Shown: positions 12,699 to 29,247 of the stretch, one piece after another
Layout of the letters: every line of letters begins with the position of its first letter
Numbering within the stretch: position 1 is the stretch's first letter
IMG/VR virus record: IMGVR_UViG_3300028364_000014
Location: 124,001-188,000 of that record
DNA: 64,000 nucleotides
Strand: one strand, 5' to 3'
Notes under the pieces: model-generated
What the model was told of the DNA's origin: nothing
Database searches by the model: none
The model's input: only the letters and a program-made list of their open reading frames with translations
Translations under genes and position numbers: made by a program

Positions 12699-12766
12699 GT
12701 AAAGACTGACTTGTTTTGGGTTATCATACTGGATTAGTACTCCCTAAAACTATTACTTGTCTTTAC
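12699..12766 (+). ncRNA. Degenerate copy of the recurring CGAA/ACUU stem-loop motif
   Basis: gtaaagac/gtctttac stem with TTATC and ACTT elements; TGAC replaces CGAA. Confidence 0.45.
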
Positions 12767-12874
12767 ATAAGCTAAATACAAGCTTATTTTCTCCTTAAAT
12801 TGTATAGTAAGGTAATTGGGTTGGCTAATTACCTTACATAAGTAACTTAAACCTTTAATAGTTGAGGAATTCGT

Positions 12875-13291
12875 ATGATAGAGAATTTACCATTTCTTTT
12901 TGATTCAGATAAAGATAGTCCTTTCGATGATTGCTCTATGGCAGAAGATAATCTAAATAACCATGATCCTGACTTGTTTCAAGATTATGACACCTTGGAG
13001 TATGAAAACATCTATGATGATTGGGGAATAATTGACCCAATTAAAGATGGAATAAGACGAGGGGTTGACCGGGTAGGTGGTGAAGATTTCATGAAATATG
13101 TTATGCCATTTGCAGAAACAATGGCTGATTATAGCTCAGAAATCCTTAAAACTCAGTCAGAAGATAAACAACTTAAGTCAATGCATGAGGAATTGACAGA
13201 AAATCGGAAAGAGTCTTTACCAAAAAGATCTTTTGAGCGGTTAGTATCAAAAGTAATTTCTGGTGAAATAAAACGTAATAATGTCAATTAG
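12875..13291 (+). CDS. Hypothetical acidic protein
   Basis: ORF with GAGG RBS. Confidence 0.65.
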   Translation: MIENLPFLFDSDKDSPFDDCSMAEDNLNNHDPDLFQDYDTLEYENIYDDWGIIDPIKDGIRRGVDRVGGEDFMKYVMPFAETMADYSSEILKTQSEDKQLKSMHEELTENRKESLPKRSFERLVSKVISGEIKRNNVN

Positions 13292-13307
13292 TTAATAAAG
13301 GTAAGAA

Positions 13308-14075
13308 ATGAAGAACTTATCAATGATTGGTAGACCTGGTTCTAAATCCGTAAAAAATATAGTTAAAATTACTGGAATTCCAAAATACAGGAAGACTGCT
13401 AAAGTTCTTATTAATTATGGGTTGGCTGGTAAAAAAATGGAACAGTTTATTAGAAACTTCCCATCAGCTAGAGGAAAATATTTTATCAACCAGTATGTTG
13501 GATGTTCAAAATATAAAGCGGTGAAGGAAGCTGAAAAGCAAAAAATCAAAGTTCCAAAAACCTATATGGTACTTCCAAATTTTGTAGAAAGTTCTAACTT
13601 TCTTACCAAAAGATTACATTCCCAAGGTGGAATAGGTATTGCCAAAGTAATAGGTAAGACCAAAAAAAACAATGAGTATTTTCAAGAATTTATTAGTGAT
13701 CGTAGATATGAATTACGTGTTCATGCCTTCGCATGGATTCCCCAAGAAGAATGGGTTTTACAAAAACGTTTTGGGCTACCAAATGAAATTGCTTGGAATT
13801 TTCATAATGGTGGTAGATTTCAATCTATTAAAAGCACTAATGGTTATAATTTATTTAAAAAAGCTAAAGAAATTTCACAAAAGATTCTTAAAATACGAAA
13901 AATGGCATTTGGTGCTGTAGATTTAATAGTAAATTCTTCTGGGGAGATATATTTTATTGAAATTAATTCCGCTCCTGGGTTTACTGGATTAAGTCAACCA
14001 ATTTATGTAAACGCTTTTAATAAATTAAAATCTATGGCAGAAAATGATGTTTTGAAGTTGTGCAATAAAAGGTAA
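13308..14075 (+). CDS. Second ATP-grasp ligase (RimK-like)
   Basis: KRLHSQGGIG, YFQEFI...YELRVH and AFGAVDLI...YFIEINSAPG. Confidence 0.85.
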   Translation: MKNLSMIGRPGSKSVKNIVKITGIPKYRKTAKVLINYGLAGKKMEQFIRNFPSARGKYFINQYVGCSKYKAVKEAEKQKIKVPKTYMVLPNFVESSNFLTKRLHSQGGIGIAKVIGKTKKNNEYFQEFISDRRYELRVHAFAWIPQEEWVLQKRFGLPNEIAWNFHNGGRFQSIKSTNGYNLFKKAKEISQKILKIRKMAFGAVDLIVNSSGEIYFIEINSAPGFTGLSQPIYVNAFNKLKSMAENDVLKLCNKR

Positions 14076-14080
14076 AAGAT

Positions 14081-14851
14081 ATGATATATGATTATGGTAG
14101 AATAATTAAACCTCCAAGATCAAAACATTGTTATAAAATTAATTTTGGTATGTCTCTATTGTCTATAAAAGACGAACAAATTTGTCGTTTTGTTTCTTGT
14201 AAAGACCGTCTTCAAGATTATTTTAAAACAACATATTACAAGGAACGTGAAAAAGATGATTATCACTCATTTTTTCCAGAAAATGAAGACCCTTTTCCTT
14301 GTACTGAAAAACTAAAACTATTGTTACTACTTGACACCACTAAACACACTGTCAGAGAGTTTTCTGGGGCATTAGATAATTGGCATGTGATTGAAGATTT
14401 TGCAGGTATTGAAAGAACTAAGTCCGAATTAGTGAAATACGATAATACCTCTAAAATAGGAAAAGAAAAACTAGTATTGCTAACTGGCGATAAAATGTAT
14501 ACAAAAAAACTACAGCTACTATCAGCAATGACTTTATTTTTAAGATTTGGGTTTTTTAATCCTACATTTAGTATAAAAAGTATAAAAGATTTAAATACTT
14601 CATTTAAAGAAGTAATACATAACAACAAAGCTTATGAAGTTAAAGATAAATATCATATGGGAGCAGTTATCAACTTAATACCTTCTATTTTTAAAAATAA
14701 AGATGAGTTATTTGAAGGGCTTGTTGAATCTGATCTATTTCCTTTAGGAAATCCTTTAATGTTTCATTCACGTTCTGGTATCGTCGCTTTGTGTGAAGAA
14801 ACAAGTGTCGTTAAGGAATTAAATACCAGGATGTGTAATTTAAAAAAGTAA
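14081..14851 (+). CDS. Hypothetical protein coupled to the ATP-grasp gene
   Basis: Starts 5 nt after the ATP-grasp stop; 256 aa. Confidence 0.7.
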   Translation: MIYDYGRIIKPPRSKHCYKINFGMSLLSIKDEQICRFVSCKDRLQDYFKTTYYKEREKDDYHSFFPENEDPFPCTEKLKLLLLLDTTKHTVREFSGALDNWHVIEDFAGIERTKSELVKYDNTSKIGKEKLVLLTGDKMYTKKLQLLSAMTLFLRFGFFNPTFSIKSIKDLNTSFKEVIHNNKAYEVKDKYHMGAVINLIPSIFKNKDELFEGLVESDLFPLGNPLMFHSRSGIVALCEETSVVKELNTRMCNLKK

Positions 14852-15009
14852 TTTGTAGTATTTCGATTAGTTACTAGATATAATACCACTAAAAATATAG
14901 GTATTAATTCTTTGATAACTAGTTTTAAACGCAAGAGGCCATACATGGTATGAGCCGATTGTTAAGATTTAATTCTTTGTTATTAATTAATAACACTGAT
15001 AACCTTGAA

Positions 15010-15120
15010 TTAGATGAGAGCGCGTGGGTTGGTGGGTGGGCGAGCCGGTGCCGGAGGCGGTAAATCCTTCGGCTTATTAAAAGCTTCATGAGAAGCAAAC
15101 GCATAAAGCGTGGTAGACAT
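15010..15120 (-). CDS. 36-aa proline-rich peptide (MSTTLYAFASHEAFNKPKDLPPPAPARPPTNPRALI)
   Basis: AAGGAGG RBS 6 nt before the ATG on the - strand; accounts for the local G-richness of the + strand. Below the ORF-track length cutoff. Confidence 0.65.
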   Translation of the reverse strand: MSTTLYAFASHEAFNKPKDLPPPAPARPPTNPRALI

Positions 15121-15140
15121 AACTAACCTCCTTTTGATGA

Positions 15141-15180
15141 GGGAGCTAAGATTATATTACAATTTTAGCTCCCATTTTTT
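15141..15180 (+). terminator. Intrinsic terminator
   Basis: GGGAGCTAA...TTAGCTCCC hairpin followed by a T-tract. Confidence 0.7.
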
Positions 15181-15208
15181 TATCTTATTTTATTAATTTG
15201 TATACACT

Positions 15209-15292
15209 AGTGAAAAACCGAATACAATGGGTTATCAAAATCCGGTCTTAAGAACCAGATCTCTATCCACTGTAATACACTTGTTTTTCACT
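15209..15292 (+). ncRNA. Recurring CGAA/ACUU structured RNA motif
   Basis: agtgaaaaac-CGAA-tacaatgg-gTTATC...ccactgta-ATAC-ACTT-gtttttcact; 10-bp P1. Confidence 0.7.
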
Positions 15293-15325
15293 ATATATAT
15301 TTAATTTTTGTAAAATTTATTGCCG

Positions 15326-15402
15326 GGCTAATTAACTCAATAGGTAGAGTATAAGGTTTAAAAAAAATCTTAATGTTTCTGGTTCAAATCCAGAATTAGC
15401 CA
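15326..15402 (+). tRNA. tRNA-like gene/pseudo-tRNA with an 11-nt A-rich anticodon loop
   Basis: GGCTAAT/ATTAGCC acceptor, D-arm and GGTTCAAATCC T-arm are intact; loop reads TTTAAAAAAAA. Confidence 0.6.
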
Positions 15403-15443
15403 CAATATAATAATAAACTTATCTTTAATTATGGAATTAAATT

Positions 15444-16067
15444 ATGAGAATAGACGAAAAAGGGTTTTTAGTTTTTGACGTCGAAACTTCTGGACTTTAT
15501 AATAACGATTATCCAGCATATGACAAACAACAAGCTTGGATTGTTCAATTTGCTGGGCAAATTCTTGATAACAACTTAAAACTAGTAAGAGAAATTTCTT
15601 TATTACTTAAACCACCTTTTCCTGATGCAGTAATAGAAGAGAAAGCCGAAGAAACACACGGTATATCTCTGGCTGAGTGTTGGAAAGATGGAGTAAGTCC
15701 AGGAAAAGTACGATTATTTCTTAAACCGGTATTTGAAGGTAAATTAAGACTAGTAGGACATAACGTCAATTTTGATAGTAAGTTCTTACATAGATTTACT
15801 GCCAACAAAGCTGAAAGAGCGCAATTAATTGAAGCCTTCAAACAAGGTATTTGTACTATGCGTTCTGGTACTAGTATATGTAAATTACCACCAACTAAGG
15901 CAATGCTTAAGTATAAAAATCTTAAGTATAAAAATCCAAAACTAGAAGAGTTACATGAGTTCTTATTCAATGAGAAATTTGTTGGTGCCCATGATGCTCT
16001 CAATGATGTTAAAGCCACAGTACGTTGCCTACGTGAGATGATAAAAAGGGGTGCGATAAGGCTTTAG
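15444..16067 (+). CDS. DEDDh 3'-5' exonuclease (DnaQ-like)
   Basis: FDVETSG, GHNVNFD and HDALNDV. Confidence 0.9.
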   Translation: MRIDEKGFLVFDVETSGLYNNDYPAYDKQQAWIVQFAGQILDNNLKLVREISLLLKPPFPDAVIEEKAEETHGISLAECWKDGVSPGKVRLFLKPVFEGKLRLVGHNVNFDSKFLHRFTANKAERAQLIEAFKQGICTMRSGTSICKLPPTKAMLKYKNLKYKNPKLEELHEFLFNEKFVGAHDALNDVKATVRCLREMIKRGAIRL

Positions 16068-16075
16068 GAGTTATT

Positions 16076-16222
16076 ATGAAATGTATTAAAAACACAAAAG
16101 GAAAGGTAATTAGAGTTACCAACTTACTTGCCGAAGAACGCGTAGATTCTGGAGATTATAAGTACTGCGGTAAAGCAGAATGGAAGAAACAATCTAAAAA
16201 GAAAGCTTCTGTATCAATCTAA
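16076..16222 (+). CDS. Small basic hypothetical protein (48 aa)
   Basis: AGGAG RBS; MKCIKNTKGKVIRV...EWKKQ. Confidence 0.55.
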   Translation: MKCIKNTKGKVIRVTNLLAEERVDSGDYKYCGKAEWKKQSKKKASVSI

Positions 16223-16284
16223 AGTAGAAGCTCTCCTATCGTGGTCGGACTCTTCTTTAGAGTTCAGAAATAAAATTGAATAAT

Positions 16285-16362
16285 GTCCGTATAGCTCAAT
16301 CTGAATAGAGCAATGACCTTCTAAGTCGTAGATTTTCGGAGGTTCGAATCCTCCTGCGGATA
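16285..16362 (+). tRNA. tRNA-Arg(TCT)
   Basis: Full cloverleaf; anticodon loop CTTCTAA. Confidence 0.9.
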
Positions 16363-16374
16363 CAAGGAAAAATC

Positions 16375-16599
16375 ATGAAAGAATACAAATTAGATTTACA
16401 TGGTGTTAGACATGTAAATGCTAGGCAATTAGTAATCTCTCTCATAGAAAAGTATTGGAATGTACAAGCAGAGTTAAAAATTATCACCGGTAACAGTTTG
16501 AAAATGAAAGGTATAGTTATAAAAGTAATTAAAGAATATGATCTACCTTATCAAGTAAGTGAAATGTGCAGGGGATTTTTAATTACTTGGACGGGATAA
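16375..16599 (+). CDS. Stand-alone Smr-domain protein
   Basis: LDLHG and IITG motifs in 74 aa. Confidence 0.65.
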   Translation: MKEYKLDLHGVRHVNARQLVISLIEKYWNVQAELKIITGNSLKMKGIVIKVIKEYDLPYQVSEMCRGFLITWTG

Positions 16600-16612
16600 A
16601 GGAACTTATACA

Positions 16613-17278
16613 ATGAACAGACCAATAATTGATTATAATACAACGGATGTTAGAATAATAAAACATAACGCATTACGTGCAGCCCTTAGAGGTGATGATG
16701 CTATGATGAATTGCACTACTTACATTGATACACATGCTGGACCCGGATGCCATAACAACTGTCCAGGTTCTCCGATGATTGCAAGTGACCATTTTAATGA
16801 ATTATTTTTATATGAAAATAATCCCGAAGATTTTAATAAATTAAAAAGAAACATGAAAGCTGGTTGTATTCTTAGAGAAGCCGATGGGTTTAAGTCGTAT
16901 TGCTATTCTGATAAGAAAACGTTCGTTTTCATGGACCCTCCATTCAAATCTATTAGAGATTATTTTAAAGTAGCAAACTATTTGCAGACTGTCCCTGGGA
17001 TAGGTGCTCTTATGCTTATGTATCCTGTTAGTGCCTTTTTTCCTATTGAAGATTTTCATTGTATGTTACAAAGACAAATAGGGGGTGTAAATTTCTTAAT
17101 AAAAAAAGCAAGAGTATCTGAAACGAAATATTATTGTATGTTTTCTTCAGATGTTTCGGTAATACCGGCATGGAAAGACATCCTTGATCATTCTAGTTTA
17201 ATTGACACTTATAGTATGCAAAATCATATTGGGGATTATTTATTTAAAAAAAGGAAACAAAATCAAAGTGGATACTAA
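16613..17278 (+). CDS. RlmJ-like adenine-N6 methyltransferase
   Basis: DVRIIKH...YIDTHAGPG, FMDPPF..RDY and LMYPV parallel the RlmJ motifs DVLKH, YLDTHAGAG, IDPPYE..DY and LWYPV. Confidence 0.7.
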   Translation: MNRPIIDYNTTDVRIIKHNALRAALRGDDAMMNCTTYIDTHAGPGCHNNCPGSPMIASDHFNELFLYENNPEDFNKLKRNMKAGCILREADGFKSYCYSDKKTFVFMDPPFKSIRDYFKVANYLQTVPGIGALMLMYPVSAFFPIEDFHCMLQRQIGGVNFLIKKARVSETKYYCMFSSDVSVIPAWKDILDHSSLIDTYSMQNHIGDYLFKKRKQNQSGY

Positions 17279-17457
17279 TAAATTAATAAATTTGATTTTA
17301 TATGGAGATGTTCATGAAACCCCTTTAAATATACTTGGTAATTTATATAAAGTCAACACTAGTGTGGTTTTTGATGATGAACAAAATACGAGATTAGCTA
17401 TTGCAGCTACACTAAAAGATCTAATCACTAAAGGAGAACTTAAAATTAGTTAAAATA

Positions 17458-17718
17458 ATGAAAAAATATTCTAAAAGAGTGTGGTTAAATCCAAAAACGT
17501 CACCGTCTACAGGAAGCATTGTTGCGTATAGGGGTCCTGCCCATTGGGTAGACCCTAAAAAAGTACAAATTCCATATACATTTCTTGAAATAGCGGATTG
17601 TCAAGTTAAAGTAAGACTTCATATGACTAAAACCGATTCCCATAGAGATTTTATTAATAAATTAGAAAAACTTGGAAATACGGCTCTTGAATTTGCAGAA
17701 TTTTTAAAAAAAATTTAA
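17458..17718 (+). CDS. Hypothetical protein
   Basis: ORF track; plausible phage protein. Confidence 0.55.
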   Translation: MKKYSKRVWLNPKTSPSTGSIVAYRGPAHWVDPKKVQIPYTFLEIADCQVKVRLHMTKTDSHRDFINKLEKLGNTALEFAEFLKKI

Positions 17719-17790
17719 GAAATAATTAACTAACTTCCTTATAATAATGAGACGAGTTTATTAATTTTCTTGTATTATAAAAAATTAAAT

Positions 17791-17856
17791 GTAAAGACCG
17801 AATTTCTATGGCTTATCAATTGGTGAAAATACCATGGATGATAAACTTGTCTTTAC
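17791..17856 (+). ncRNA. Recurring CGAA/ACUU motif, copy 1 of a tandem pair
   Basis: gtaaagac-CGAA-tttctatgg-cTTATC...ccatggatg-ATAA-ACTT-gtctttac. Confidence 0.7.
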
Positions 17857-17861
17857 AAACG

Positions 17862-17924
17862 CAAGGACCGAAGCATCTGGTTCATCCTTTTAAGATAATA
17901 CACCAGAAGCACCACTTGTCCTTG
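17862..17924 (+). ncRNA. Recurring CGAA/ACUU motif, copy 2 of a tandem pair, abutting tRNA-Thr
   Basis: caaggac-CGAA-gcatctgg-TTCATC...ccagaagc-ACC-ACTT-gtccttg. Confidence 0.7.
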
Positions 17925-17928
17925 TTAT

Positions 17929-18000
17929 GCCTATATAGCTGAGATGGTTTAGCACAGCCCTTGTAAGGCTGAGACGTGGGATCGTGACCTACTATAGGCT
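17929..18000 (+). tRNA. tRNA-Thr(TGT)
   Basis: GCCTATA/TATAGGC acceptor; CAGCC-CTTGTAA-GGCTG anticodon arm; atypical T-loop ATCGTGA. Confidence 0.85.
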
Positions 18001-18032
18001 CAAATATTAAATTTAAAAAAAGGAATTAACTT

Positions 18033-18224
18033 ATGCTTTTTAAAGCACACTTTAAGAAAAGAGATTACTGGACAGTAATGTGTCCTGAGTGCCAATGTTC
18101 TATAGATACTTATAAAGACCCTGAGAACTGTAAGTTTGTTAAATGTAGTTCTTGTGGTCAAATTTACAACTTAGAAAATCCTGCAAAAACAATATTAAAA
18201 ATAGACAATAATAATAATAACTAA
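18033..18224 (+). CDS. Small zinc-ribbon protein
   Basis: CPEC and CSSC pairs. Confidence 0.6.
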   Translation: MLFKAHFKKRDYWTVMCPECQCSIDTYKDPENCKFVKCSSCGQIYNLENPAKTILKIDNNNNN

Positions 18225-18660
18225 CATACTATAAGGTCTTTACTTTCTTGCACTTATAGTTTCTATTAATAACAGCTAAGGAGAATGAAAAATGAAAAAG
18301 TTCACATGGTGGTCACCAGGAGGAGCTACAGCCAAACTTACTGAAAAAGAAAAAATATGGTTAAAAGAGCACCCAGATTGGGAAATAAAATGGACAGCCT
18401 TTTATAGATGTAATTTTTTAAATAACTTGGAAGTGAGACGTTACGATAAGTATATGACTAGTAAAGGGTATATCAAGACAAATTAATATTCTAATAAACT
18501 AACCTATTAATAAGTAAGCACAAATAATTTAATTGGTACATATTAGCAAATATTAAAGGGATAACAGATTATACATAACTTTTTAAATAGTTAAGAATAA
18601 ATAAGATTATTTTAAGGGGAGCAGATGAAAACTTGCTTCCCTTCTTATTTTAATAAATTA

Positions 18661-18732
18661 TTCTCTATAGTGAAATTGGCATCACGTGTGGCTGTTAACC
18701 ACAAATTTCTGGTTCAAATCCAGATAGAGGAG
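18661..18732 (+). tRNA. tRNA-Asn(GTT)
   Basis: Cloverleaf with TGTGG-CTGTTAA-CCACA and G73. Confidence 0.88.
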
Positions 18733-18768
18733 CAAGTAAAGTGTCTTTTAAATAAAAGGATAAATAAG

Positions 18769-18951
18769 ATGAATTTTGAAGCATTAAAACAAGTTATTAC
18801 CTATATAGCTAAAATAACCTGTGTTATTATTGCTATTCCCTTTGTAATTATAATTATTGTTTTAGGATTACTTATGAGTGCGGTAAGTATTACCATTGAA
18901 GCTGGTCAGGAAATAATTAGAGAAATTAAAATTATTATAGAAGACATGTAA
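18769..18951 (+). CDS. Small membrane protein (start corrected to lie downstream of tRNA-Asn)
   Basis: AAGGA RBS before the ATG at 18769; one hydrophobic helix. Confidence 0.55.
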   Translation: MNFEALKQVITYIAKITCVIIAIPFVIIIIVLGLLMSAVSITIEAGQEIIREIKIIIEDM

Positions 18952-18961
18952 AAAATTTAAC

Positions 18962-19033
18962 GCGAGTATAACTCAATTGGTAGAGTGTTGGTTTTCCAAA
19001 TCAATGATCTTGGTTCGAATCCAGGGACTCGCT
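18962..19033 (+). tRNA. tRNA-Gly(TCC)
   Basis: GCGAGT/ACTCGC acceptor, loop TTTCCAA, U73. Confidence 0.85.
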
Positions 19034-19101
19034 CAAAGAGTATAAAGGTTTAATAAAAACCCTCTTGAATTCAATAAAAATGATAATAAGGAGTATTAAA
19101 A

Positions 19102-19449: not shown

Positions 19450-19457
19450 ATGAAGTA

Positions 19458-19531
19458 CGGGCGGTGACCAAGTCTGGTATGGTACTGGCTTTGGATGCCA
19501 GGAATCGGAGGTTCAAATCCTCTTCGCCCGA
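19458..19531 (+). tRNA. tRNA-Pro(TGG)
   Basis: CGGGCGG/TCGCCCG acceptor; CTGGC-TTTGGAT-GCCAG anticodon arm. Confidence 0.9.
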
Positions 19532-19661
19532 ATTTTTATTAGTATGGTCTTTAGTCCGTAAAACCCAATGTCTTTAGCTCGGGCTACCTCGATGAATCAG
19601 AAATCTTTAAGCGCGATCTTTTAGAATCCCAATCCTTTAGGTTTGGGAGTATGTCAAATTA

Positions 19662-19736
19662 GCAGAAGTAATTCAATTGGTAGAAAATTATCCACCAAGA
19701 TAATAAATGCAAGTTCAATCCTTGTCTTCTGCTCCA
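19662..19736 (+). tRNA. tRNA-Gly-like RNA with a 6-nt anticodon loop (CACCAA) and encoded CCA
   Basis: GCAGAAG/CTTCTGC acceptor, U73, CCA; TTATC-CACCAA-GATAA. Confidence 0.7.
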
Positions 19737-19866
19737 TTTATGCGGTAATCGTAAAAGGCGATCACTTATCTTCAACGGTTTGTATTGACGATATCTATAC
19801 ATATATTTCTGTTATGAATGATAGAGAAAGAAAAAAAGTGAAATTCTTTACTACTGCCCATAAAAT

Positions 19867-21122: not shown

Positions 21123-21339
21123 AATAACAGGAAGTTGGCTTAAAGGCAGCCACTTATAATGAGTGAGGCGAAGACCTACTGCTAGTTCATTTGCTTGACA
21201 GGCTTGGTATCGGTTATTAATGTTAAGGTCTGGGCAAACCATGGTGTCCAATAGCGTAGGAGATATCTCGGTAAAGTAACGAAGCACCCCAGAAATGGTA
21301 AGGCGGGTTTCCTCTTTGGCGTAGCAGCACACTATTATT
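21123..21339 (+). ncRNA. 23S rRNA H42-H44 (L11-binding domain) mimic with an insert of about 150 nt
   Basis: CAGGAAGTTGGCTTAAAGGCAGCCAC...AATGAGT and GCGTAGCAGCACACT match 23S nt ~1054-1105 as recalled; closing helix AATAACAG/CTATTATT. Confidence 0.75.
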
Positions 21340-21349
21340 TTATCATTTT

Positions 21350-21628: not shown

Positions 21629-21762
21629 GAAGATTGTAGCTCAACTGGTTAGAGCGGCTGACCCAAAAATCTTTTTGCATCCACTTGTCACCCATCTATG
21701 ACCGAAGTAAAAAGTTTATCATACTTCAGCGAGTTGAGGGTTCAAATCCCTCCAATCTTCCA
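21629..21762 (+). ncRNA. tRNA scaffold with a 64-nt structured insert in the anticodon loop
   Basis: AAGATTG/CAATCTT acceptor, canonical D and T arms, and a GCTGA/TCAGC stem enclosing 21662-21725; G-1:C73. Confidence 0.75.
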
Positions 21763-22632: not shown

Positions 22633-22644
22633 AGAGGACTACTT

Positions 22645-22908
22645 ATGGAAAAACTTAGAACTAAATCGACTTTCATAAAAGATAAATTTTATGTTAGATT
22701 ACTAGAAGACGATTATGTAATAAACGAAATGGCATGCAAAGATAAAGTTGATATTACTTGGTGTTGTAACTATATGCTGCGATGGTTTGATAAGTTGGAT
22801 GGTAGTTCTAAAATGGCTTCAGCATCTAGGTCTCGTTGGTATAAGAATAAATATAAACCTACTGGAAAAATTTGGCACGAGAAAGATTTAAGAAGGGAAA
22901 ATATATGA
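22645..22908 (+). CDS. Hypothetical protein
   Basis: GAGG RBS. Confidence 0.55.
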   Translation: MEKLRTKSTFIKDKFYVRLLEDDYVINEMACKDKVDITWCCNYMLRWFDKLDGSSKMASASRSRWYKNKYKPTGKIWHEKDLRRENI

Positions 22909-23236
22909 AAAAAGATGGTGGAAATATAAAAAATTGGCAGTTACATAATCTTACATACAAAGACGACTCTTTAAAACAATTAAAAGAGATGTATCCTGAA
23001 GCAGTTACTAAACCAAACCCAATGATAGTAACTGGCACTGTAGTTAATGAACCTACTGGTAGATGGAAACCTGGAAATCACTTTAGATCTTCTATGATTG
23101 TAAAGATAAATCGAAAAAATAACACTATTGAAACTTTAAATACAATTTACCATTTTGATCCTGAAACTGAAGGGCAAGACACTATACCTGACTTAGGTAA
23201 TGGGGTACTTGGTATATTTTATTAAGGAAATATTAA

Positions 23237-23587
23237 ATGAATAAAATAAAAATATGCGATAAAAAAGGATGTAACAACATCACAAGAACGCCTGATGTAA
23301 AATATCGTAGCATAGTTTGTGCTGCCACCGACTATGATTTTTTAATCAATGATAAAAAAAAACAAAATAAAATACCTTTTATTTCCGTAGGTAATAATGA
23401 ACTTAAAGATAATAAAAAATTAAAAAAAGGTAATTTAATAGATTGTCCTCACTGTCTGAAGAAACATAAAGTAGAACTAGGAAAAACATCTGATGGTGTA
23501 GAAACTGATTCCTTAATGTTCTATAAGTGCGGAAAAAATTTATATCTTTGTGGAGTAGACGGGGTGTCTCTAAGTGCATCCAGCTGA
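23237..23587 (+). CDS. Hypothetical Cys-containing protein
   Basis: RBS; CPHC and YKC...LCG. Confidence 0.55.
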   Translation: MNKIKICDKKGCNNITRTPDVKYRSIVCAATDYDFLINDKKKQNKIPFISVGNNELKDNKKLKKGNLIDCPHCLKKHKVELGKTSDGVETDSLMFYKCGKNLYLCGVDGVSLSASS

Positions 23588-23897
23588 AACATTAATTCAT
23601 TGGAGTTGCAGTGATAAAGAACATAAGCAATTATTAAAAGAATACAAACAATTTTACGATGTTATTGTAAATAATGGATTTAAAAAAGAATTAGATGTAT
23701 TAATAAGTGCTTCTTACCGTGTAGGCAGTATGGATGAGTGGGATGCTAATGAGGAAATAATATGAATTTATATGAAATTTTAAATACGCTTCATAAAGTT
23801 GAAGACCAGGGACCTGCCTCTTTAGATAAAAAAGAAAAGGATCAGTTAATATACAATATGACTGAATTCATTAAAGCAATAGTTAAAGAGGACTATA

Positions 23898-24455
23898 ATG
23901 ACTGATTTTTTTACGTCCGATTGGCATATGTTTCATTATAATATTATTAAATATGCCAATAGACCATTTAAAGATGAAAATACAATGAAAAATGAAATCA
24001 TTAAGAGACATAATGAAGTAGTAAGACCAGAAGACACTACATATGTTCTTGGTGATGTAGCAATGATTGGTAGACACGGACTGAGTAAATTAGAACCTAT
24101 ACTTAAAAAAATGAATGGTACTTTTCATCTTATTCTTGGTAATCACGATGAGGGTAAGCCATTTACTTATGAAAGGATGGGGTTTACTACAGTACATACA
24201 GCACTTCAATATGATACTAATACAATCCTAAGACATGACCCAGCGTCTGCTATTATTATGCCTGATAAGTTGTGGCTTGTAGGGCATGTGCATAATCTAT
24301 TTAAAATTTCTCTTAAACATACTATATGCTATAACGTAGGGGTCGATGTTAATAATTTCTATCCTGTAACTCTTGCACATATACATAAAGAAATTATTGA
24401 AGCTAAAAAAGATAGGGAATTATTTAATCGATTTAGAGAAAAAGGAGGCAGTTAA
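23898..24455 (+). CDS. Calcineurin-like metallophosphoesterase
   Basis: SDWH, LGD, GNHD and GHVH motifs. Confidence 0.9.
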   Translation: MTDFFTSDWHMFHYNIIKYANRPFKDENTMKNEIIKRHNEVVRPEDTTYVLGDVAMIGRHGLSKLEPILKKMNGTFHLILGNHDEGKPFTYERMGFTTVHTALQYDTNTILRHDPASAIIMPDKLWLVGHVHNLFKISLKHTICYNVGVDVNNFYPVTLAHIHKEIIEAKKDRELFNRFREKGGS

Positions 24456-25668
24456 CATTAAAACAAAATACTACGGTGATACCCCACTAGTATCAGCTGA
24501 ACTACCAAAAAATAACACCACTGAAGCTGAAGTAGAATCAGGGCTTAATATCTGTTTATACAAGCTAAAAGAAAGTAAACTACCCTACAATAAAAAATTA
24601 TTTGGTAATGTTACAGTTAATGATCTAAGAAAAGTATTAAAGACCAGTGTTGACGCAATTAGTTTTACAAAAAGTGAACTAGGTGAAGCTTGGTTTAAAT
24701 AATTATTCATAAAACAAGAAAATTATGAGGAGAGTAACTTTATGTCAAATAAAGATAGATTAGGTAAATTAACGATATGTAGGAGTTGTGGGTGGTTTGG
24801 TTATAAAATAGAATTTGAAAACAATATATGTCCAAACTGTTTTAAATACATTTGAAATGTTAAAAAAATTTACTAGTTGGGTATTTGATAGTGACGGTAG
24901 AAGAAAACGTAAGAGAGAGTATAAGTCTTATGACTTAGGGTTTGGTTGGGCAATGGCTGAACATTTAATTCACAAAAAATCTATTATGGAACTTCAAAGT
25001 TACATTGTAGAGCACACTGATAGCTCATTTGATTGGGGAGCACAAGACGCTATAGAACTTATTATTGAATCAGGACTAGAATTAGAATAAATTATAAAAG
25101 TGGGAAGCTGATTGCTTGGCGCAGCCCTGAAAATCGCACTATAAATATAATTCTAAATGCGTCATAGCCTTATGAATATAAAATATCTTATATTTATAAG
25201 GCATAAGCTAATGAACGTGTACTAATTAATTTTATAAATTATAATATAGACACTTTCACAAATACTAATAATATTGGGAGAATTAATGCAAAGAAAAGTT
25301 TGGACATTGGATAAAAGAATAGCGTTATTTAAATTTCTTAAAGATCGATTTGGACCACTTAGTGCTTGGCCTGGATCGTCTCCAGTAGAAGGGGCAACTA
25401 ATTTACTAAATTTTTGTAATCATTTTGCTGGATTAGTAAAAGCAAAATCTGGAAGAGCGGTACTTAATCAAGTTAGGTGGGCGGTTACAAGTCAACCATC
25501 CGTTAAAAATATTTCTACATTTTTTGAATGTAAAGCTGCAGCGTTGGATGCGGGATTTATTACTAGCAAAGAAATGCCTACTAAAGTTGAATGTAAGTAT
25601 TAATTAAAGATATTTAACTAACTCTTATATTATTAGGATGTTTTAAAATTAAAGGAGGTGATACCTAT

Positions 25669-25836
25669 ATGCCTGGAAAAGACGGAACTGGTCCTAACGG
25701 TAATGGACCAAAAAAAGTAAAGCAGGGTGTTCCTACACCAAAAAACAATAAGAATAAACGAGGGTCTAAAAATGATCCCGGAGCCGGAAGAGGTGGGGGA
25801 GGTGGCATCGGCGGTAGAGGTAGAGGAAATAGATAA
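25669..25836 (+). CDS. 55-aa Gly/Arg-rich DUF5320-like peptide (MPGKDGTGPNGNGP...GGRGRGNR)
   Basis: Strong AAAGGAGGTGA RBS; the MPGxDGTGP N-terminus is typical of DUF5320. Missed by the ORF track. Confidence 0.7.
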   Translation: MPGKDGTGPNGNGPKKVKQGVPTPKNNKNKRGSKNDPGAGRGGGGGIGGRGRGNR

Positions 25837-25920
25837 AAAGGAGATCTTATGCAAGTAAAGCATAAGAAATTTATAGAAGACACCCTTTAAGTTACTTAGT
25901 GTAACTAAAGGAGGTGTTTA

Positions 25921-26238
25921 ATGCAATACAAAGATATTTTTTATTTATACACTTATCATTTTACTAAGAATTGGAAAATAGTAACAACAATAAGATCCCA
26001 CCCATTTAGGTTTCGATTTGATCAAGTACCTCACACTGGTGGAAGAAAGCCGTGTATTTATGGTGGTGTTAGACACATGAAGACTACACAAGAACGTAAG
26101 TGGTCTTTAGCTCATGGTAAATACGTGAGAGGTAGAAGGAGTTTTCGTATACTTCCTAATAGTTGGGATGATTATTGGCATGCACGCCGTGAAAAAGGCT
26201 GGAAGCGATCAAAAAATAAGAAAAGACAGTGGCAGTAG
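25921..26238 (+). CDS. Hypothetical basic phage protein
   Basis: GGAGG RBS; RGRRSFRILPNSWDD. Confidence 0.6.
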   Translation: MQYKDIFYLYTYHFTKNWKIVTTIRSHPFRFRFDQVPHTGGRKPCIYGGVRHMKTTQERKWSLAHGKYVRGRRSFRILPNSWDDYWHARREKGWKRSKNKKRQWQ

Positions 26239-26308
26239 TTTAGTTAAAAGTTCCTATATTCGTCGTGAATATAGGGACATAACAATTATATTTTAGGGAG
26301 AATTAATA

Positions 26309-26590
26309 ATGTTTTTTAGAACTGAAAATGGTGAAGAAAAAAAAGTAATGTTTCGGCATAATCGCGAAGAACGTCCAGATAAGAATGGTATTTATAGAGG
26401 TCATCCAGTTAATACTGAGTGTAGTATTTTTGTTGATGATACAGTGGTAGGGCATGGCATTGCGATGTGCAACCCTGTGGACCATTTTGATAAACGAATT
26501 GGTAGAAAGAAGTCTTTTGAACGAGCACTAAGAAATGCTGATTTTAATGTTAAAGACAGAACTTTAGGTTGGGCAGAATTCTGGAAGTAA
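26309..26590 (+). CDS. Hypothetical phage protein
   Basis: GGAG RBS; AMCNPVDHFDKRIGRKKSFERAL, a motif type common in phages. Confidence 0.6.
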   Translation: MFFRTENGEEKKVMFRHNREERPDKNGIYRGHPVNTECSIFVDDTVVGHGIAMCNPVDHFDKRIGRKKSFERALRNADFNVKDRTLGWAEFWK

Positions 26591-26613
26591 CGATATATAA
26601 AATAAAATAAAAT

Positions 26614-26702
26614 TGAGAGTTGCCCGAGTGGTTGAAGGGGTTCGCCTGCTAAGCGAATGAGGTTAGAAATAGTCTCCGAGGGTTCAAATCCCTCACTCTC
26701 AG
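26614..26702 (+). tRNA. tRNA-Ser(GCT)
   Basis: Type II cloverleaf; loop CTGCTAA; G73. Confidence 0.92.
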
Positions 26703-26716
26703 ACGGGAAAATTATT

Positions 26717-27115
26717 ATGCAATGGCTGTATAAGCTATACATTAAATTTATAAATTCAAGTACTTGGCATCATTTATATTATAAACACACTAAAGAATTT
26801 AAAAAAATGATTTCTAACGTAGAAAAAAATGCATTAGAATTTAGAAAAAAATGTGAGGAACTAGAAACTTATCCATGCCAATACTGCCTTGAATTAGGTA
26901 ATAAAGTATGTATTAAAACTTGTGACTTGATTGAGCATGATAATGAGGTATTAACAGCATTAATAAATAAAAATAAATGTTGTCCTGATTGTGGAAATAA
27001 GAACTCATTATGTAAAGGACCTGAAGCAGGAGCATCACAAAATATTTATTGTACCAACTGTAATCATTGGTTTAATTTCTGTCTTGGTACTTTTACGCAT
27101 AGAATTATTAAATAA
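26717..27115 (+). CDS. Cys-rich hypothetical protein (start corrected to lie after tRNA-Ser)
   Basis: CQYC, CPDC and CTNC pairs. Confidence 0.6.
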   Translation: MQWLYKLYIKFINSSTWHHLYYKHTKEFKKMISNVEKNALEFRKKCEELETYPCQYCLELGNKVCIKTCDLIEHDNEVLTALINKNKCCPDCGNKNSLCKGPEAGASQNIYCTNCNHWFNFCLGTFTHRIIK

Positions 27116-27127
27116 GGAATTATATAT

Positions 27128-27865
27128 ATGGATACAACAGTTGATTTTACTTTTCCTGTAGTGCCTTTTTGCGAAGCACAATTAAAAGACATAAACCCTT
27201 CAGATATACTTATGAATAATATGTTTAGGGTTTGTAATGTCTATAAGGGTGGTGGAGGATATGATAAGTTTCCTGATATTGCTTTTAGACGTACTGGATG
27301 TATAACAGATAAACAATTTATAGTACAACTTAAAGGATGCCCACTTAAATGTTCTTACTGTTATGTTACTCCTGCCGGTATTAATGGGGAAGCTACATAT
27401 CATTCTTCTGACCTTTTAGTTTCTATATTTAAAACCTCTATGGAATTAAATAAAACTAAGGTATTTCACCTAATGGGCGGAGCTCCAGCAATATATATAG
27501 ATAAGTGGCACCACATCATATCAAAACTACCTAAAGGCGCTATATTTCATTCTGATATCATGCTAATTGAAAAAGCATACAATAAAGTAGACTTTAGTGC
27601 TTTAAATAAACCTAATTGTCTATACGCTGTATCAATAAAGGGAAATAATGCTGAAGAATTTTTTAAGAAAACCAGTACCGAATTAAATGAGAGTTTATTC
27701 TGGAAAAATTTTGATATTGTTGTAAATAGCGGTATAAGTTTTTATATTACATTTACTGATATTAATCCAACTGAAATATATCAAAAAATTGCCGATAGAT
27801 ACGGACTTGGTGTGTTGAAAGACTCATTTACTATTAAAAAAATAGAATATGAAGCTATAAAATAA
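27128..27865 (+). CDS. Radical SAM superfamily protein
   Basis: GCPLKCSYC (CxxxCxxC) and a HLMGGAP (GGEP-like) motif. Confidence 0.75.
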   Translation: MDTTVDFTFPVVPFCEAQLKDINPSDILMNNMFRVCNVYKGGGGYDKFPDIAFRRTGCITDKQFIVQLKGCPLKCSYCYVTPAGINGEATYHSSDLLVSIFKTSMELNKTKVFHLMGGAPAIYIDKWHHIISKLPKGAIFHSDIMLIEKAYNKVDFSALNKPNCLYAVSIKGNNAEEFFKKTSTELNESLFWKNFDIVVNSGISFYITFTDINPTEIYQKIADRYGLGVLKDSFTIKKIEYEAIK

Positions 27866-27878
27866 TAAAATTTATTGT

Positions 27879-27968
27879 GTTGGGAGTGGCGAAATTGGCT
27901 AGACGCGCTAGGTTGTGGTCCTAGTATCCGTAAAGGATGTGAGGGTTCGAATCCCTTCTCTCACCCCA
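27879..27968 (+). tRNA. tRNA-His(GTG) with a long variable arm
   Basis: CTAGG-TTGTGGT-CCTAG; G-1:C73 and CCA; ATCC-GTAAA-GGAT variable arm; Leu-type D-arm. Confidence 0.85.
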
Positions 27969-28113
27969 AAAATAATAATAATTAAATAAGGATTTAATTT
28001 ATGAAAGTAATTAAAACTATATGGAAAAAACTAAGCAGTGTTCTGTGTAAAAATGAAATTAATACAGATATTTCTGAGTGTATTCCACGAACAACAATAG
28101 TAAGAAGATAGGG

Positions 28114-28420
28114 TATGTGGGAAGTGGGCTTAGAGGCAGCCAGCTTTTAAAGAGTGAGACAAATACGTATCGCGAATCGATGAACCTATAAGTTGCCATG
28201 AATACTTATAGCGGAGACTGAAACATGGCCAGAGTAAAGAATAGTAGCTACCTTCTTACGAGGTGATGCACGGTTGTGATTTATAAGCTATTATAAAATA
28301 TCATATACTGTAAGATGCAATCCTGCTCCTGATGATGCGAACGAAATAGATATGGCAAGTTGAAAGGAACCCCGTAAATGGTAAGACCTGACATCTCTTT
28401 GGCGTAGAAGCACACCACTA
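28114..28420 (+). ncRNA. Second 23S rRNA H42-H44 mimic with an insert of about 245 nt
   Basis: GGGAAGTGGGCTTAGAGGCAGCCAGCTTTTAAAGAGT ... TCTCTTTGGCGTAGAAGCACAC. Confidence 0.75.
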
Positions 28421-28560
28421 TTTATTAAATATTTATATAAACCTGTAGTTACGAAGGGTATTAGGGAACCTAAGAAATGCCTCACTTCATAAATTGGAGA
28501 TTAATGGCTGGTATAGATCTAATATATTATAGATATTTTTAACAGCAAAGGGCTTAAATA

Positions 28561-29130
28561 ATGAATATAAATAAACTTTTGGCTTGGTTAGCGATAATTA
28601 TCCTAGGAATTTGTACTTACCTAGTTCCTGTATCAGCAAATCAAAATTGGCATTCAGAATATGTAATAAATCTTCAAGGCAATAAACCAGTTGTTATTAT
28701 TACTAATGGTAAAAATAAAATTGTGTATACACCAACTGAAGAACAAACATTTATGGTTGCTGTTACGAGAGCTATAAAACAGGGCGCTGATGCTTGTGAG
28801 TGTATGAAGATAGCCATAGATATGAATTATACCCCATATCTCGTTTTAAAGACCATATACTCAATCGGTAGCTACATAAAACTCGATCAGTTGTGCATGT
28901 GCGCCACCGAAACAGGGATAATGAAAGCTATTATTGTAAAAGCCGCTATTGATGCCACCTTACCGACAGGAGAACATAGATTTAGTAGGGATGAAATTAT
29001 TCAATCACAATGTTTAAAATTAGAAAAGGAAATTGATTATATATTTGTTGTACCAGCATTGCCCACTCTTCCACCCATAAAAATAGATATAGATAGCGAT
29101 AAATCCTTTGCTACAAAAACAACTTTTTAA
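28561..29130 (+). CDS. Exported hypothetical protein
   Basis: N-terminal signal/TM segment. Confidence 0.6.
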   Translation: MNINKLLAWLAIIILGICTYLVPVSANQNWHSEYVINLQGNKPVVIITNGKNKIVYTPTEEQTFMVAVTRAIKQGADACECMKIAIDMNYTPYLVLKTIYSIGSYIKLDQLCMCATETGIMKAIIVKAAIDATLPTGEHRFSRDEIIQSQCLKLEKEIDYIFVVPALPTLPPIKIDIDSDKSFATKTTF

Positions 29131-29143
29131 AGTATATAAAAAC

Positions 29144-29247
29144 GTAAGAACCGAAGCAAATAGTTCATCAAACTAAAAAGATAATGATGTAGTAAATCAT
29201 TACGTAACAAAAAACAACTTAAACTATTGGCACTCACTTGTTCTTAC
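29144..29247 (+). ncRNA. Recurring CGAA/ACUU motif
   Basis: gtaagaac-CGAA-gcaaatagtt-CATC...aactattggc-ACTC-ACTT-gttcttac. Confidence 0.7.

What the first reader, a model, noticed from the sequence alone, without database searches (positions are those of the whole stretch)
12699..29247. Unnamed recurring RNA motif (P1-CGAA-P2-UU(C)AUC...P2'-AYNC-ACUU-P1') in six copies, often next to tRNAs
Seen: copies at 12699-12766 (degenerate), 15209-15292, 17791-17856, 17862-17924, 21671-21725 (permuted) and 29144-29247. Stem sequences differ completely but stay paired, while the CGAA, ACUU and UUAUC elements are conserved, which is within-genome covariation. Two copies sit in tandem 4 nt before tRNA-Thr and one precedes a pseudo-tRNA. 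It does not fit the hammerhead, twister, pistol, hairpin or HDV consensus as I recall them. Inference: a new self-cleaving/processing element or a binding site for a phage RNA-processing protein.
Basis: partly seen in the sequence, partly recalled or inferred. Interest (0 to 1): 0.85.

Follow-up and report, generated by a model that had tools for sequence, protein, structure and literature searches.

The report
Phage Y RNAs among tRNA genes
The repeated RNA motif is the signature of Y RNAs, small RNAs that dock onto the Ro60 protein, which this giant phage also encodes; the kind of RNA is known, but here it sits inside the tRNA gene array and once takes the shape of a tRNA.

Summary
All six copies exist at the stated coordinates, fold as described and covary. 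The motif is not unnamed. P1-CGAA-P2-UUAUC...P2'-ACUU-P1' is the Y RNA architecture: a terminal stem, a Ro60-binding helix with a bulged C, an upper stem and a UUAUC element. A covariance model built mostly from copies in other phage contigs recovers five window copies. In 76 further phage loci chosen only for carrying a Ro60 (TROVE) gene, it gives 56 hits. All are on the Ro60 strand and nearly all lie within about 700 nt of the gene. The window's own contig encodes a full-length Ro60 about 25 kb upstream of the window. The 'permuted' copy is the anticodon arm of a tRNA-shaped RNA (21630-21761). 29 homologues of that RNA, mostly just upstream of Ro60 genes, covary in every helix. The self-cleaving ribozyme idea is not supported. 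'Binding site for a phage protein' is close: the protein is most likely Ro60. Possibly undescribed points: Y RNAs occupying 'tRNA slots' in phage tRNA arrays, 37-54 kb from their Ro60 gene; a tRNA-topology Y RNA, the inverse of the permuted YrlA; and a phage consensus close to nematode sbRNA. Binding, processing and function are inferred.

The parts
12699..12766 (+). Small Y-RNA-like hairpin, degenerate copy: UGAC replaces CGAA, while ACUU, P1, P2 and GGGUUAUC are kept. It stands alone between two hairpins, not next to a tRNA.
   Evidence: Fold; model R1 gives 21.2 bits, E 0.0037.
15208..15293 (+). Small Y RNA gene with an 11-bp P1, CGAA, P2, GGGUUAUC and a longer apical part. It follows an intrinsic-terminator-like hairpin (15141-15173) and lies 32 nt before a tRNA-like gene.
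   Evidence: R1 gives 22.2-31.2 bits; terminator.
17790..17857 (+). Small Y RNA gene, first of a tandem pair.
   Evidence: R1 gives 37.9 bits, E 1.5e-7, although this copy was not in the seed.
17861..17925 (+). Small Y RNA gene, second of the tandem pair. It ends 3 nt before tRNA-Thr(UGU).
   Evidence: R1 gives 71.8 bits (seed member); RF01656 sbRNA gives 23.2 bits, E 0.0063.
17929..18001 (+). tRNA-Thr(UGU) immediately downstream of the tandem Y RNAs. RNase P cleavage at its 5' end would define the Y RNA 3' end (inferred). The same Y-to-tRNA-Thr arrangement occurs in locus L069.
21630..21761 (+). tRNA-shaped Y RNA. It has a 7-bp acceptor stem, D arm, T arm and a 5-bp anticodon stem. The loop of that stem is replaced by a closed Ro60-type module (21671-21725: P2'-AUCC-ACUU-P1'-loop-P1-CGAA-P2-UUUAUC).
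   Evidence: Rfam tRNA 50.7 bits with a 63-nt insert; fold; aligns with Ro60-adjacent RNAs; R2 gives 98.9 bits; 29 homologues are 94.1% paired and 27/29 pairs have double changes.
29144..29247 (+). Small Y RNA gene with an insertion of about 40 nt (an extra hairpin) in the apical region.
   Evidence: R1 gives 29.7 bits, E 7e-5.
10468..11859 (+). CCA-adding enzyme gene. This is context only: it could finish the 3' end of the tRNA-shaped Y RNA, which does not encode CCA.
   Evidence: Pfam PolyA_pol, PolyA_pol_RNAbd, HD and tRNA_NucTran2_2. Any link to the Y RNAs is inferred.

Best explanation
The six elements are genes for Y RNAs, the small non-coding RNAs that bind the ring-shaped Ro60 (Rsr/TROVE) protein. 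In each, the two ends pair (P1). Next to P1, the 5' strand carries C-G-A-A and the 3' strand A-C-U-U. In known Y RNAs these give a bulged C followed by G.U and A-U pairs, the distorted helix that Ro60 grips. P2 and the UUAUC/GAUAA hairpin form the upper 'effector' module. The phage supplies its own Ro60, a 540-aa protein encoded at contig positions 97,716-99,335, on the same strand and about 25 kb upstream of the window. Five copies are simple hairpin Y RNAs of about 65-105 nt. The sixth is a whole tRNA scaffold whose anticodon loop is replaced by the same Ro60 module. The copies lie in the phage tRNA array on the tRNA strand. Several copies, here and in other phages, lie 1-12 nt from a flanking tRNA. 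They are therefore most likely co-transcribed with the tRNAs and released by tRNA-processing enzymes, with RNase P cleavage of the next tRNA setting the Y RNA 3' end. The resulting Ro60-Y RNPs most likely redirect RNA surveillance, decay or repair in the infected cell, as in the Ro60/Y RNA/PNPase machine of Deinococcus and Thermus phage phiLo. Shown here: the structure, the covariation, the family-wide co-location with Ro60 genes, and the Ro60 gene in this genome. Inferred: binding, processing route and biological role.
For: 1) The architecture equals the published Y RNA definition: a 5'-3' stem flanking a bulge with CGAA (PMC12135203); GNCGAA plus YUAY in bacterial YrlA and GGUCCGA in vertebrates (PMC4201824); and a UUAUC motif in sbRNA and vertebrate Y RNAs (PMC4726728).
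2) The best Rfam similarity is to nematode sbRNA RF01656, below threshold. A sibling in L115 reaches the gathering score.
3) An IMG/VR scan with the RNA pattern alone returned, among chance matches, true members with paired P1 and P2. Two of these loci carry a TROVE + vWA_Ro60 gene 0.5-4 kb away.
4) Model R1, with 5 of 6 seed sequences from other phages, recovers window copies 1-4 and 6. It hits 5 of 5 initial TROVE loci and 40 of 76 further TROVE loci with 56 hits at E<=0.01. All 56 are on the TROVE strand and nearly all lie within about 700 nt of the ORF.
5) Family covariation: 57 sequences, 93.9% paired, 321 double-change cells, and 0/500 shuffles reaching the observed score or percentage paired.
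6) The window's own contig encodes Ro60. It is a full-length homologue of D. radiodurans Rsr 2NVO (E 6e-104) and of Xenopus and human Ro60.
7) The tRNA-shaped form recurs immediately upstream of Ro60 genes and covaries in every helix.
8) Y copies occupy tRNA-like slots: 20 of 57 have a tRNA or another Y RNA within 20 nt on the same strand.
Against: No copy reaches the gathering score of any Rfam Y-RNA-type family, and the Rfam scans of the window listed no Y-RNA-type family other than the sub-threshold RF01656 hits, even at E<=10. In this phage the Ro60 gene is 37-54 kb from the copies, and no copy lies within 10 kb of it, unlike the usual adjacency. Copy 1 lacks CGAA. The base two positions before CGAA is A here, against G in the bacterial GNCGAA motif and U in vertebrates, although it covaries with its partner. 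There are no expression, end-mapping or binding data, and the host is unknown. The effector and the biological role are pure inference.
Confidence: 0.85

Rival explanations
1. The elements are a new self-cleaving ribozyme or an autonomous RNA-processing element that punctuates the tRNA transcripts.
For: The unpaired nucleotides are conserved within a covarying scaffold, and the elements lie next to tRNAs. No known ribozyme family is excluded by experiment.
Against: No ribozyme family in Rfam matches, even at E<=10. Every conserved element is accounted for by the Y RNA consensus. Many family members sit beside Ro60 genes with no tRNA nearby, so tRNA punctuation cannot be the primary role.
Confidence: 0.03
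2. The hairpins bind another phage or host protein (for example a nuclease, a tRNA-modifying enzyme or PNPase directly), or act as decoys for host tRNA-targeting defences, and their link to Ro60 is only genomic.
For: In this phage the copies are unlinked from Ro60 and are embedded among tRNA genes and RNA-enzyme genes: an RNase_T-family exonuclease at 15444-16067, an RlmJ-like methyltransferase at 16613-17278 and a CCA-adding enzyme. The UUAUC module is conserved as strongly as CGA, and no partner for it is known.
Against: The same covariance model hits the immediate flanks of Ro60 genes on the same strand in 45 of 81 loci. The conserved lower helix matches the part of Y RNAs that Ro60 contacts. 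Thermus phage Ro60 was shown to bind CGAA-bearing hairpins. A second partner for the upper module is compatible with, not contrary to, the Y RNA reading.
Confidence: 0.07
3. The 21630-21761 gene is an ordinary tRNA interrupted by a 63-nt intron that is removed to give a decoding tRNA. The Y-like motif there would be an intron feature.
For: It scores 50.7 bits on the tRNA model with the insert exactly in the anticodon loop. The acceptor, D and T arms are intact.
Against: The insert is far too small for a group I intron, the only intron type I know of in bacterial or phage tRNAs (established knowledge). The insert carries the Ro60 module and is conserved with covariation in 29 homologues, mostly just upstream of Ro60 genes. 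Most homologues lack a regular anticodon stem.
Confidence: 0.04
4. Some copies, especially copy 1 and perhaps copy 6, are decaying, non-functional duplicates.
For: Copy 1 has lost CGAA and scores only 21 bits. Copy 6 carries a 40-nt insertion and was not listed by the full-model scan without filters; it was found by the default search.
Against: Both keep perfect P1 and P2 pairing and the ACUU element. Copy 1 is retained in the ENA assembly of the same phage (L283).
Confidence: 0.3

Closest known systems
Small bacterial and phage Y RNAs without a tRNA-like domain: Salmonella YrlB, and Yrl1/Yrl2 of Thermus phage phiLo (PMC12135203)
   Same: Both are hairpins whose 5' and 3' ends pair, with an internal bulge carrying CGAA next to the terminal stem. 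Both are encoded on the Ro60 strand, family-wide right beside the Ro60 gene. Phage-encoded Ro60 is present in both cases.
   Different: In this phage the genes are scattered through a tRNA array 37-54 kb from Ro60. The family has a strongly conserved UUAUC/GAUAA apical helix and a consensus close to metazoan sbRNA. No sequence comparison with YrlB or Yrl1/2 was possible here, because no reference sequences were held.
YrlA, the tRNA-mimicking bacterial/phage Y RNA (PMC4201824; bioRxiv 10.1101/312249)
   Same: YrlA also combines a Ro60-binding stem (GNCGAA ... YUAY) with a tRNA-like D arm, T arm and acceptor stem. The Ro60 stem occupies the position of the anticodon stem, as it does here.
   Different: YrlA is a circularly permuted tRNA mimic: its RNA ends lie in the Ro60 stem and its acceptor stem is closed by a loop. 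The window RNA at 21630-21761 and its 28 homologues have the opposite topology. The ends lie in a 7-bp acceptor stem like a real tRNA, and the Ro60 module is closed by a short loop. The Rfam scans returned only the tRNA family for this RNA.
Metazoan Y RNAs and nematode stem-bulge RNAs (Rfam RF00019, RF01656)
   Same: They share the same order of elements: lower stem, bulged C in (G)GNCCGA, upper stem ending in GGGUUAUC, and a 3' strand ending in ACUUG(N)CC. They are partners of Ro60. RF01656 is the best Rfam match.
   Different: The phage RNAs are shorter and have a small apical loop. They are not RNA polymerase III products with a U-tail and La binding (established knowledge). They are phage-encoded and lie among tRNA genes. 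Scores are below threshold for the window copies.
D. radiodurans Yrn1 and the RYPER complex (Ro60 / Y RNA / PNPase)
   Same: It is the likely working model: the Y RNA tethers Ro60 to an exoribonuclease and gates its cavity (PMC4726728; phage version in PMC12135203).
   Different: No PNPase or other effector has been identified for this phage, and the upper module differs.

Membership tests
Y RNA (Ro60-binding ncRNA, broad class) | The 5' and 3' ends pair to form a terminal stem, with a second (upper) stem above an internal loop or bulge. | tested here: met
   Single-sequence folds. Covariation: 95.4% paired on the seed and 93.9% on 57 members.
Y RNA (Ro60-binding ncRNA, broad class) | A conserved Ro60-contact sequence on the 5' strand (vertebrate GGUCCGA; bacterial GNCGAA; 'CGAA motif'), with 3' partner residues giving a bulged helix. 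| tested here: met
   (G/A)ACCGAA ... ACUUGU(C/U) is present in copies 2-4 and 6 and in the permuted copy. In the 57-member family, C8 is 96% and G9 100% conserved, and the CUU on the 3' side 84-95%. Copy 1 does not meet this (UGAC).
Y RNA (Ro60-binding ncRNA, broad class) | Encoded next to, or in the same genome as, a Ro60/TROVE gene and on the same strand. | tested here: met
   Family level: 56/56 hits on the TROVE strand and 40/76 loci hit, plus 5/5 loci. Genome level: Ro60 is at contig 97,716-99,335 on the same strand. It is not adjacent: no copy lies within 10 kb of it.
Y RNA (Ro60-binding ncRNA, broad class) | Physical binding to Ro60 and stabilisation by it. | not testable with these tools
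   This needs EMSA or RIP with the phage Ro60.
Rfam Y-RNA-type families (RF00019 Y_RNA, RF01656 sbRNA, yrlA) | A score at or above the family's gathering threshold. | tested here: not met
   The best score is RF01656 at 23.2 and 16.3 bits against a threshold of 38. No other Y-type family is listed at E<=10. A Ro60-adjacent sibling in L115 reaches 38.1 bits.
YrlA (tRNA-like Y RNA) | A tRNA-like D arm, T arm and acceptor stem joined to a Ro60-binding stem at the anticodon-stem position. | tested here: met
   Window 21630-21761 scores 50.7 bits on the tRNA model and folds accordingly. In 29 homologues the D, T and acceptor helices are 99-100% paired.
YrlA (tRNA-like Y RNA) | Circularly permuted topology: the RNA termini lie in the Ro60 stem and the acceptor stem is closed by a loop. 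| tested here: not met
   The acceptor strands are the two ends of the element, and P1 is closed by a loop of about 2-10 nt in the five aligned seed sequences. The topology is therefore the inverse of YrlA.
Small self-cleaving ribozymes (hammerhead, twister, pistol, hatchet, hairpin, HDV and others in Rfam) | A match to the family's covariance model. | tested here: not met
   No such family appears in any Rfam scan, including permissive scans of short stretches.
Ro60 / TROVE protein (the partner, outside the window) | A TROVE HEAT-repeat ring plus a C-terminal vWA domain, full length. | tested here: met
   Pfam PF05731 + PF25045 on the 540-aa product. The gene is 99% identical in the window's own contig. 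It aligns over nearly its whole length with 2NVO, 1YVP and 9NEN.

The most novel reading that the evidence does not exclude
Three linked points may be undescribed.
(a) A widespread phage class of 'tRNA-topology' Y RNAs: genuine tRNA scaffolds with open acceptor ends, whose anticodon loop is replaced by a closed Ro60-binding module. This is the inverse permutation of YrlA. Such RNAs would be substrates for RNase P, RNase Z and the CCA-adding enzyme, and could be the ancestral or intermediate form from which permuted YrlA arose.
(b) Small Y RNAs that ride as passengers in phage tRNA arrays, matured by tRNA-processing enzymes and genetically unlinked from Ro60. Searches restricted to Ro60 neighbourhoods would miss them.
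(c) A phage small-Y consensus (GGGC-C-GAAG ... GGGUUAUC ... CUUGUCC) so close to nematode sbRNA and vertebrate Y RNA that the UUAUC element, assigned a DNA-replication role in animals, would be an ancient Ro60-linked feature.
Probability: 0.45. Interest if true: 0.65.

Novelty: new variant of a known kind. Interest (0 to 1): 0.5.

Why it matters
Ro60 and Y RNAs are studied as an RNA-surveillance machine and as a human autoantigen, but bacterial and phage Y RNAs are poorly catalogued. They have mostly been sought only beside Ro60 genes. This locus shows that a jumbo phage can carry six of them far from Ro60, hidden in its tRNA array, and Rfam-based annotation does not flag them. The two models built here (R1, R2) pick up more than 80 further examples in Ro60-bearing phage contigs, so the family can be catalogued. 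The tRNA-shaped form offers a direct test of how tRNA mimicry and Ro60 binding are combined, and of how permuted YrlA evolved. The near-identity of the phage consensus to animal Y/sbRNA bears on the origin of Y RNAs and on what UUAUC does. It also suggests that phages pair tRNA supply with a Ro60-based RNA quality-control or decay system during infection.

Tried and rejected
- MAFFT alignments of the copies (5 window copies, A1; 11 copies including other phages, A3) put the 3' strand of P2 out of register. I replaced them with a clean 6-sequence seed (A4).
- Rfam at gathering threshold, and at E<=10 over 18 kb, gave only tRNAs and noise. Only a 151-nt scan exposed the sbRNA similarity.
- Megablast and tblastn of window sequences against cultured phages gave nothing, so there is no close cultured relative.
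- A relative found through the exonuclease gene (L002) was not syntenic and had no tRNAs.
- Ro60 was not found in the window by Pfam scans of 20 of the 25 ORFs of at least 250 aa or by tblastn with two phage Ro60 proteins.
- One exact-protein look-up found no record. Walking along the assembly succeeded.
- The supplementary tables of PMC4201824 and the 2020 Annual Review were not available. I therefore could not check whether any of the 22 phage YrlA reported in 2014 have the tRNA topology.
- The GC-richer non-coding stretch 21125-21340 does not fold better than shuffles and matches no family.
- R1 and R2 on four cultured Ro60 phages gave one strong tRNA-form-like hit (Gordonia phage Cashline) and weak hits in Mycobacterium phage Turret. 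In Turret the sequence looks more like the classical permuted YrlA. This was left unresolved.

Full report
THE OBSERVATION. The window is an AT-rich stretch of a 237,910-bp viral contig, IMGVR_UViG_3300028364_000014. Window position 1 corresponds to contig position 124,001. It carries about 18 tRNA or tRNA-like genes on the + strand between 15 and 34 kb. Each folds on its own into P1, an internal loop and P2, with z-scores of -2.4 to -3.5. A minimal descriptor (CGAA, ACUU 25-140 nt downstream, at least 6 bp of P1) finds exactly four hits in 128 kb of both strands. Copy 1 (12699-12766) has UGAC for CGAA. The 'permuted' copy (21671-21725) lies inside a gene that the Rfam tRNA model matches at 50.7 bits with a 63-nt insert in the anticodon loop.

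WHAT THE MOTIF IS. The order of elements is: terminal stem, C-G-A-A, upper stem ending in GG(G)UUAUC, then the return strand, a few unpaired bases, A-C-U-U and the terminal stem. This is the architecture of Y RNAs. Published descriptions agree. Vertebrate Ro60 contacts GGUCCGA in a helix with a bulged C. Bacterial YrlA and YrlB carry GNCGAA near the 5' end and a conserved YUAY just after it (PMC4201824). Phage phiLo Yrl1 and Yrl2 were recognised by 'a 5'-3' stem flanking a bulge harbouring CGAA' and bind phage Ro60 in gel shifts (PMC12135203). A UUAUC motif is conserved in nematode stem-bulge RNAs and vertebrate Y RNAs (PMC4726728). A permissive Rfam scan of 17780-17930 gives as best matches, for both tandem copies, RF01656, a nematode sbRNA family. 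The scores are 23.2 bits (E 0.0063) and 16.3 bits, below the threshold of 38. This was a lead from resemblance, so I tested it by genomic association.

TEST BY ASSOCIATION. An exact-pattern scan of IMG/VR with only RNA features (GACCGAA ... TYATC ... ACTTGTC) returned 81 stretches, mostly chance matches. Filtering for P1 and P2 pairing left true members in six other contigs. In four of these the element lies inside a tRNA array on the tRNA strand. In L069 it lies 2-4 nt upstream of tRNA-Thr, as in the window. In two of them a gene with Pfam TROVE plus vWA_Ro60 domains lies 0.5-4 kb away. I built a covariance model (R1) from one window copy and five copies from other contigs. On this seed, 95.4% of cells are paired and 13 pairs have changes on both sides. 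The long copy 6 scores 29.7 bits in the default search. I then collected phage loci solely by their Ro60 gene. R1 hit all five of the first set. In 76 further loci it gave 56 hits at E<=0.01, every one on the Ro60 strand. Nearly all lie within about 700 nt upstream or downstream of the ORF, and 40 of the 76 loci were hit. One of these hits (L115) reaches the gathering score of RF01656. An alignment of 57 members is 93.9% paired, 17 of 23 pairs change on both sides, and none of 500 shuffles reaches the observed percentage paired or covariation score. The consensus is nncGGGC-C-Ga-A-g...aggGUUAuC...ga(n)aa...ccc...CUU-GuCC. The family is therefore the Ro60-adjacent Y RNA of phages, and the window copies belong to it.

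THE PARTNER PROTEIN. No Ro60 is encoded in the 64-kb window. Walking along an ENA assembly of the same phage reached a 540-aa TROVE + vWA_Ro60 gene. A direct search shows the same protein, 99% identical, on the window's own contig at 97,716-99,335. That is the same strand, 24.7 kb upstream of window position 1 and 37-54 kb from the six RNAs. It aligns end to end with D. radiodurans Rsr (2NVO, E 6e-104), Xenopus Ro60 (1YVP) and human RO60 (9NEN). Unusually, no R1 hit and no tRNA lies within 10 kb of this gene. In this phage the Y RNAs have moved into, or arose within, the tRNA array.

THE tRNA-SHAPED COPY. Just upstream of Ro60 genes in other phages, the Rfam tRNA model also reports matches of 120-126 nt. 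They align with window 21630-21761. The shared order is: 7-bp acceptor stem, D arm, then P2'-A/CCUU-P1'-short loop-P1-CGA(A/U)-P2-GUUAUCC, then the variable region, the T arm and the acceptor 3' strand. A second model (R2) finds 29 full-length members at E<=1e-8. Most lie immediately upstream of Ro60 on its strand. Two lie in the tRNA arrays of the window's relatives L069 and L079. Their alignment is 94.1% paired and 27 of 29 pairs have compensatory changes. The acceptor, D and T helices are 99-100% paired. Published YrlA is described as a circularly permuted tRNA mimic, with its ends in the Ro60 stem and a closed acceptor stem (bioRxiv 10.1101/312249). The RNAs here have the inverse topology. 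In the text searches I could run, I found no description of this form or of Y RNAs in phage tRNA arrays. I could not read the 2014 supplement or the 2020 review.

HOW IT MOST LIKELY WORKS. Shown: the structures, the conservation, the co-location with Ro60 across phages, and Ro60 in this genome. Inferred from the established behaviour of Ro60-Y RNPs: Ro60 binds the CGAA/ACUU helix, and the upper module (P2 plus the UUAUC/GAUAA helix, or the tRNA body) recruits or gates an effector such as PNPase, changing which RNAs are degraded or repaired in the infected cell. Inferred from anatomy: the RNAs are made as part of tRNA precursor transcripts and are released by tRNA-processing enzymes. Spacers to flanking tRNAs or Y RNAs are 1-12 nt in the window, L055, L069, L079 and L086, and 20 of 57 small Y RNAs have such a neighbour within 20 nt. 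Copy 2 follows a terminator-like hairpin and may start its own unit. The phage also encodes a CCA-adding enzyme, which the tRNA-shaped RNA would need because it does not encode CCA.

RIVALS AND VERDICT. A ribozyme is unsupported: no family matches, and every conserved base is explained by the Y RNA consensus. A different protein partner cannot be excluded for the upper module, but it does not displace Ro60 for the lower helix. A spliced tRNA is unlikely for 21630-21761, given the size and conservation of the insert. Copy 1 may be decaying. It is a Y RNA, a known kind, present here in a new genomic setting and, for one copy, in a topological variant that appears widespread among Ro60-encoding phages.

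Noticed in passing
window 15326-15403 (+): A tRNA-like gene called tRNA-Phe(AAA) by ARAGORN. Its anticodon loop is 11 nt long (UUU followed by eight A). The tRNA model scores 59.4 bits with 5 extra loop bases. This is the 'pseudo-tRNA' that follows Y copy 2.
   Followed up: partly
window 19662-19733 and 31159-31233 (+): Two paralogous tRNA-like genes with 6-nt anticodon loops (CACCAA and CUCCAA). ARAGORN reports a 2-base anticodon for one and misses the other. The anticodon stem of the first reads UUAUC/GAUAA, the same letters as the Y RNA apical helix.
   Followed up: no
window 27880-27968 and 31059-31148 (+): tRNA-His(GUG) and tRNA-Asn(GUU) genes of 89-90 nt with long variable arms. This class II shape is not usual for these identities.
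   Followed up: no
L079 7702-7846 (-): In a related phage tRNA array, a 145-nt element with a 9-bp terminal stem, CGAA, UUCAUC and an internal T-arm-like hairpin (GGUUCAAGUCC). It looks like a Y RNA of the classical type, with its ends in the Ro60 stem.
   Followed up: partly
L087 5569-5881 (+), upstream of the TROVE gene at 6001: An array of three Y RNAs with tRNA-like spacing: tRNA-shaped Y, 4 nt, small Y, 7 nt, tRNA-shaped Y. The Ro60 gene starts about 120 nt further on.
   Followed up: yes
L294 3764-3911 (Gordonia phage Cashline, MW534378.1) and L291 3614-3937 (Mycobacterium phage Turret): In cultured actinophages the intergenic gaps just upstream of the annotated 'Ro-like RNA binding protein' genes carry unannotated Y-RNA-like elements. 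R2 scores 59 bits in Cashline; hits in Turret are weaker. 363 cultured phage records encode a Ro60 relative.
   Followed up: partly
window 21125-21340 (+): A GC-richer non-coding stretch before tRNA-Glu. Positions 21128-21181 resemble the 23S rRNA GTPase-associated centre (LSU model positions 1094-1147, 12.7 bits, E 0.057). The whole stretch does not fold better than shuffles.
   Followed up: partly
window 19535-19650 (+): Five spaced repeats of a UCUUUAG-like heptamer in the spacer between tRNA-Pro and a tRNA-like gene.
   Followed up: no
window 43339-46491 (-); also L283 3731-6211: A ClpB-like AAA+ protein interrupted by an intein (Hint plus LAGLIDADG). Just upstream of the window, a helicase carries a faint LAGLIDADG hit, hinting at an intein.
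   Followed up: no
window 39911-41803 (-) and 32608-33813 (-): A full-length Hsp70/DnaK (868 bits) and an IS605-type TnpB (OrfB_IS605 plus Cas12f1-like TNB domain), both encoded in the phage genome.
   Followed up: no
window 865-7296 and 13308-14075 (+), continuing upstream in L283/L284: A large cluster of glutamine amidotransferase, phiEco32-like COOH-NH2 ligase and ATP-grasp genes. An ATP-grasp homologue also flanks the tRNA/Y array in the relative L079.
   Followed up: no
window 15444-16067 and 16613-17278 (+): An RNase_T-family DEDD exonuclease and an RlmJ-like RNA methyltransferase are encoded between the Y RNA and tRNA genes. They are possible RNA-processing partners. Streptomyces phage Comrade also has a DnaQ-like gene near its Ro60 and tRNAs.
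   Followed up: no
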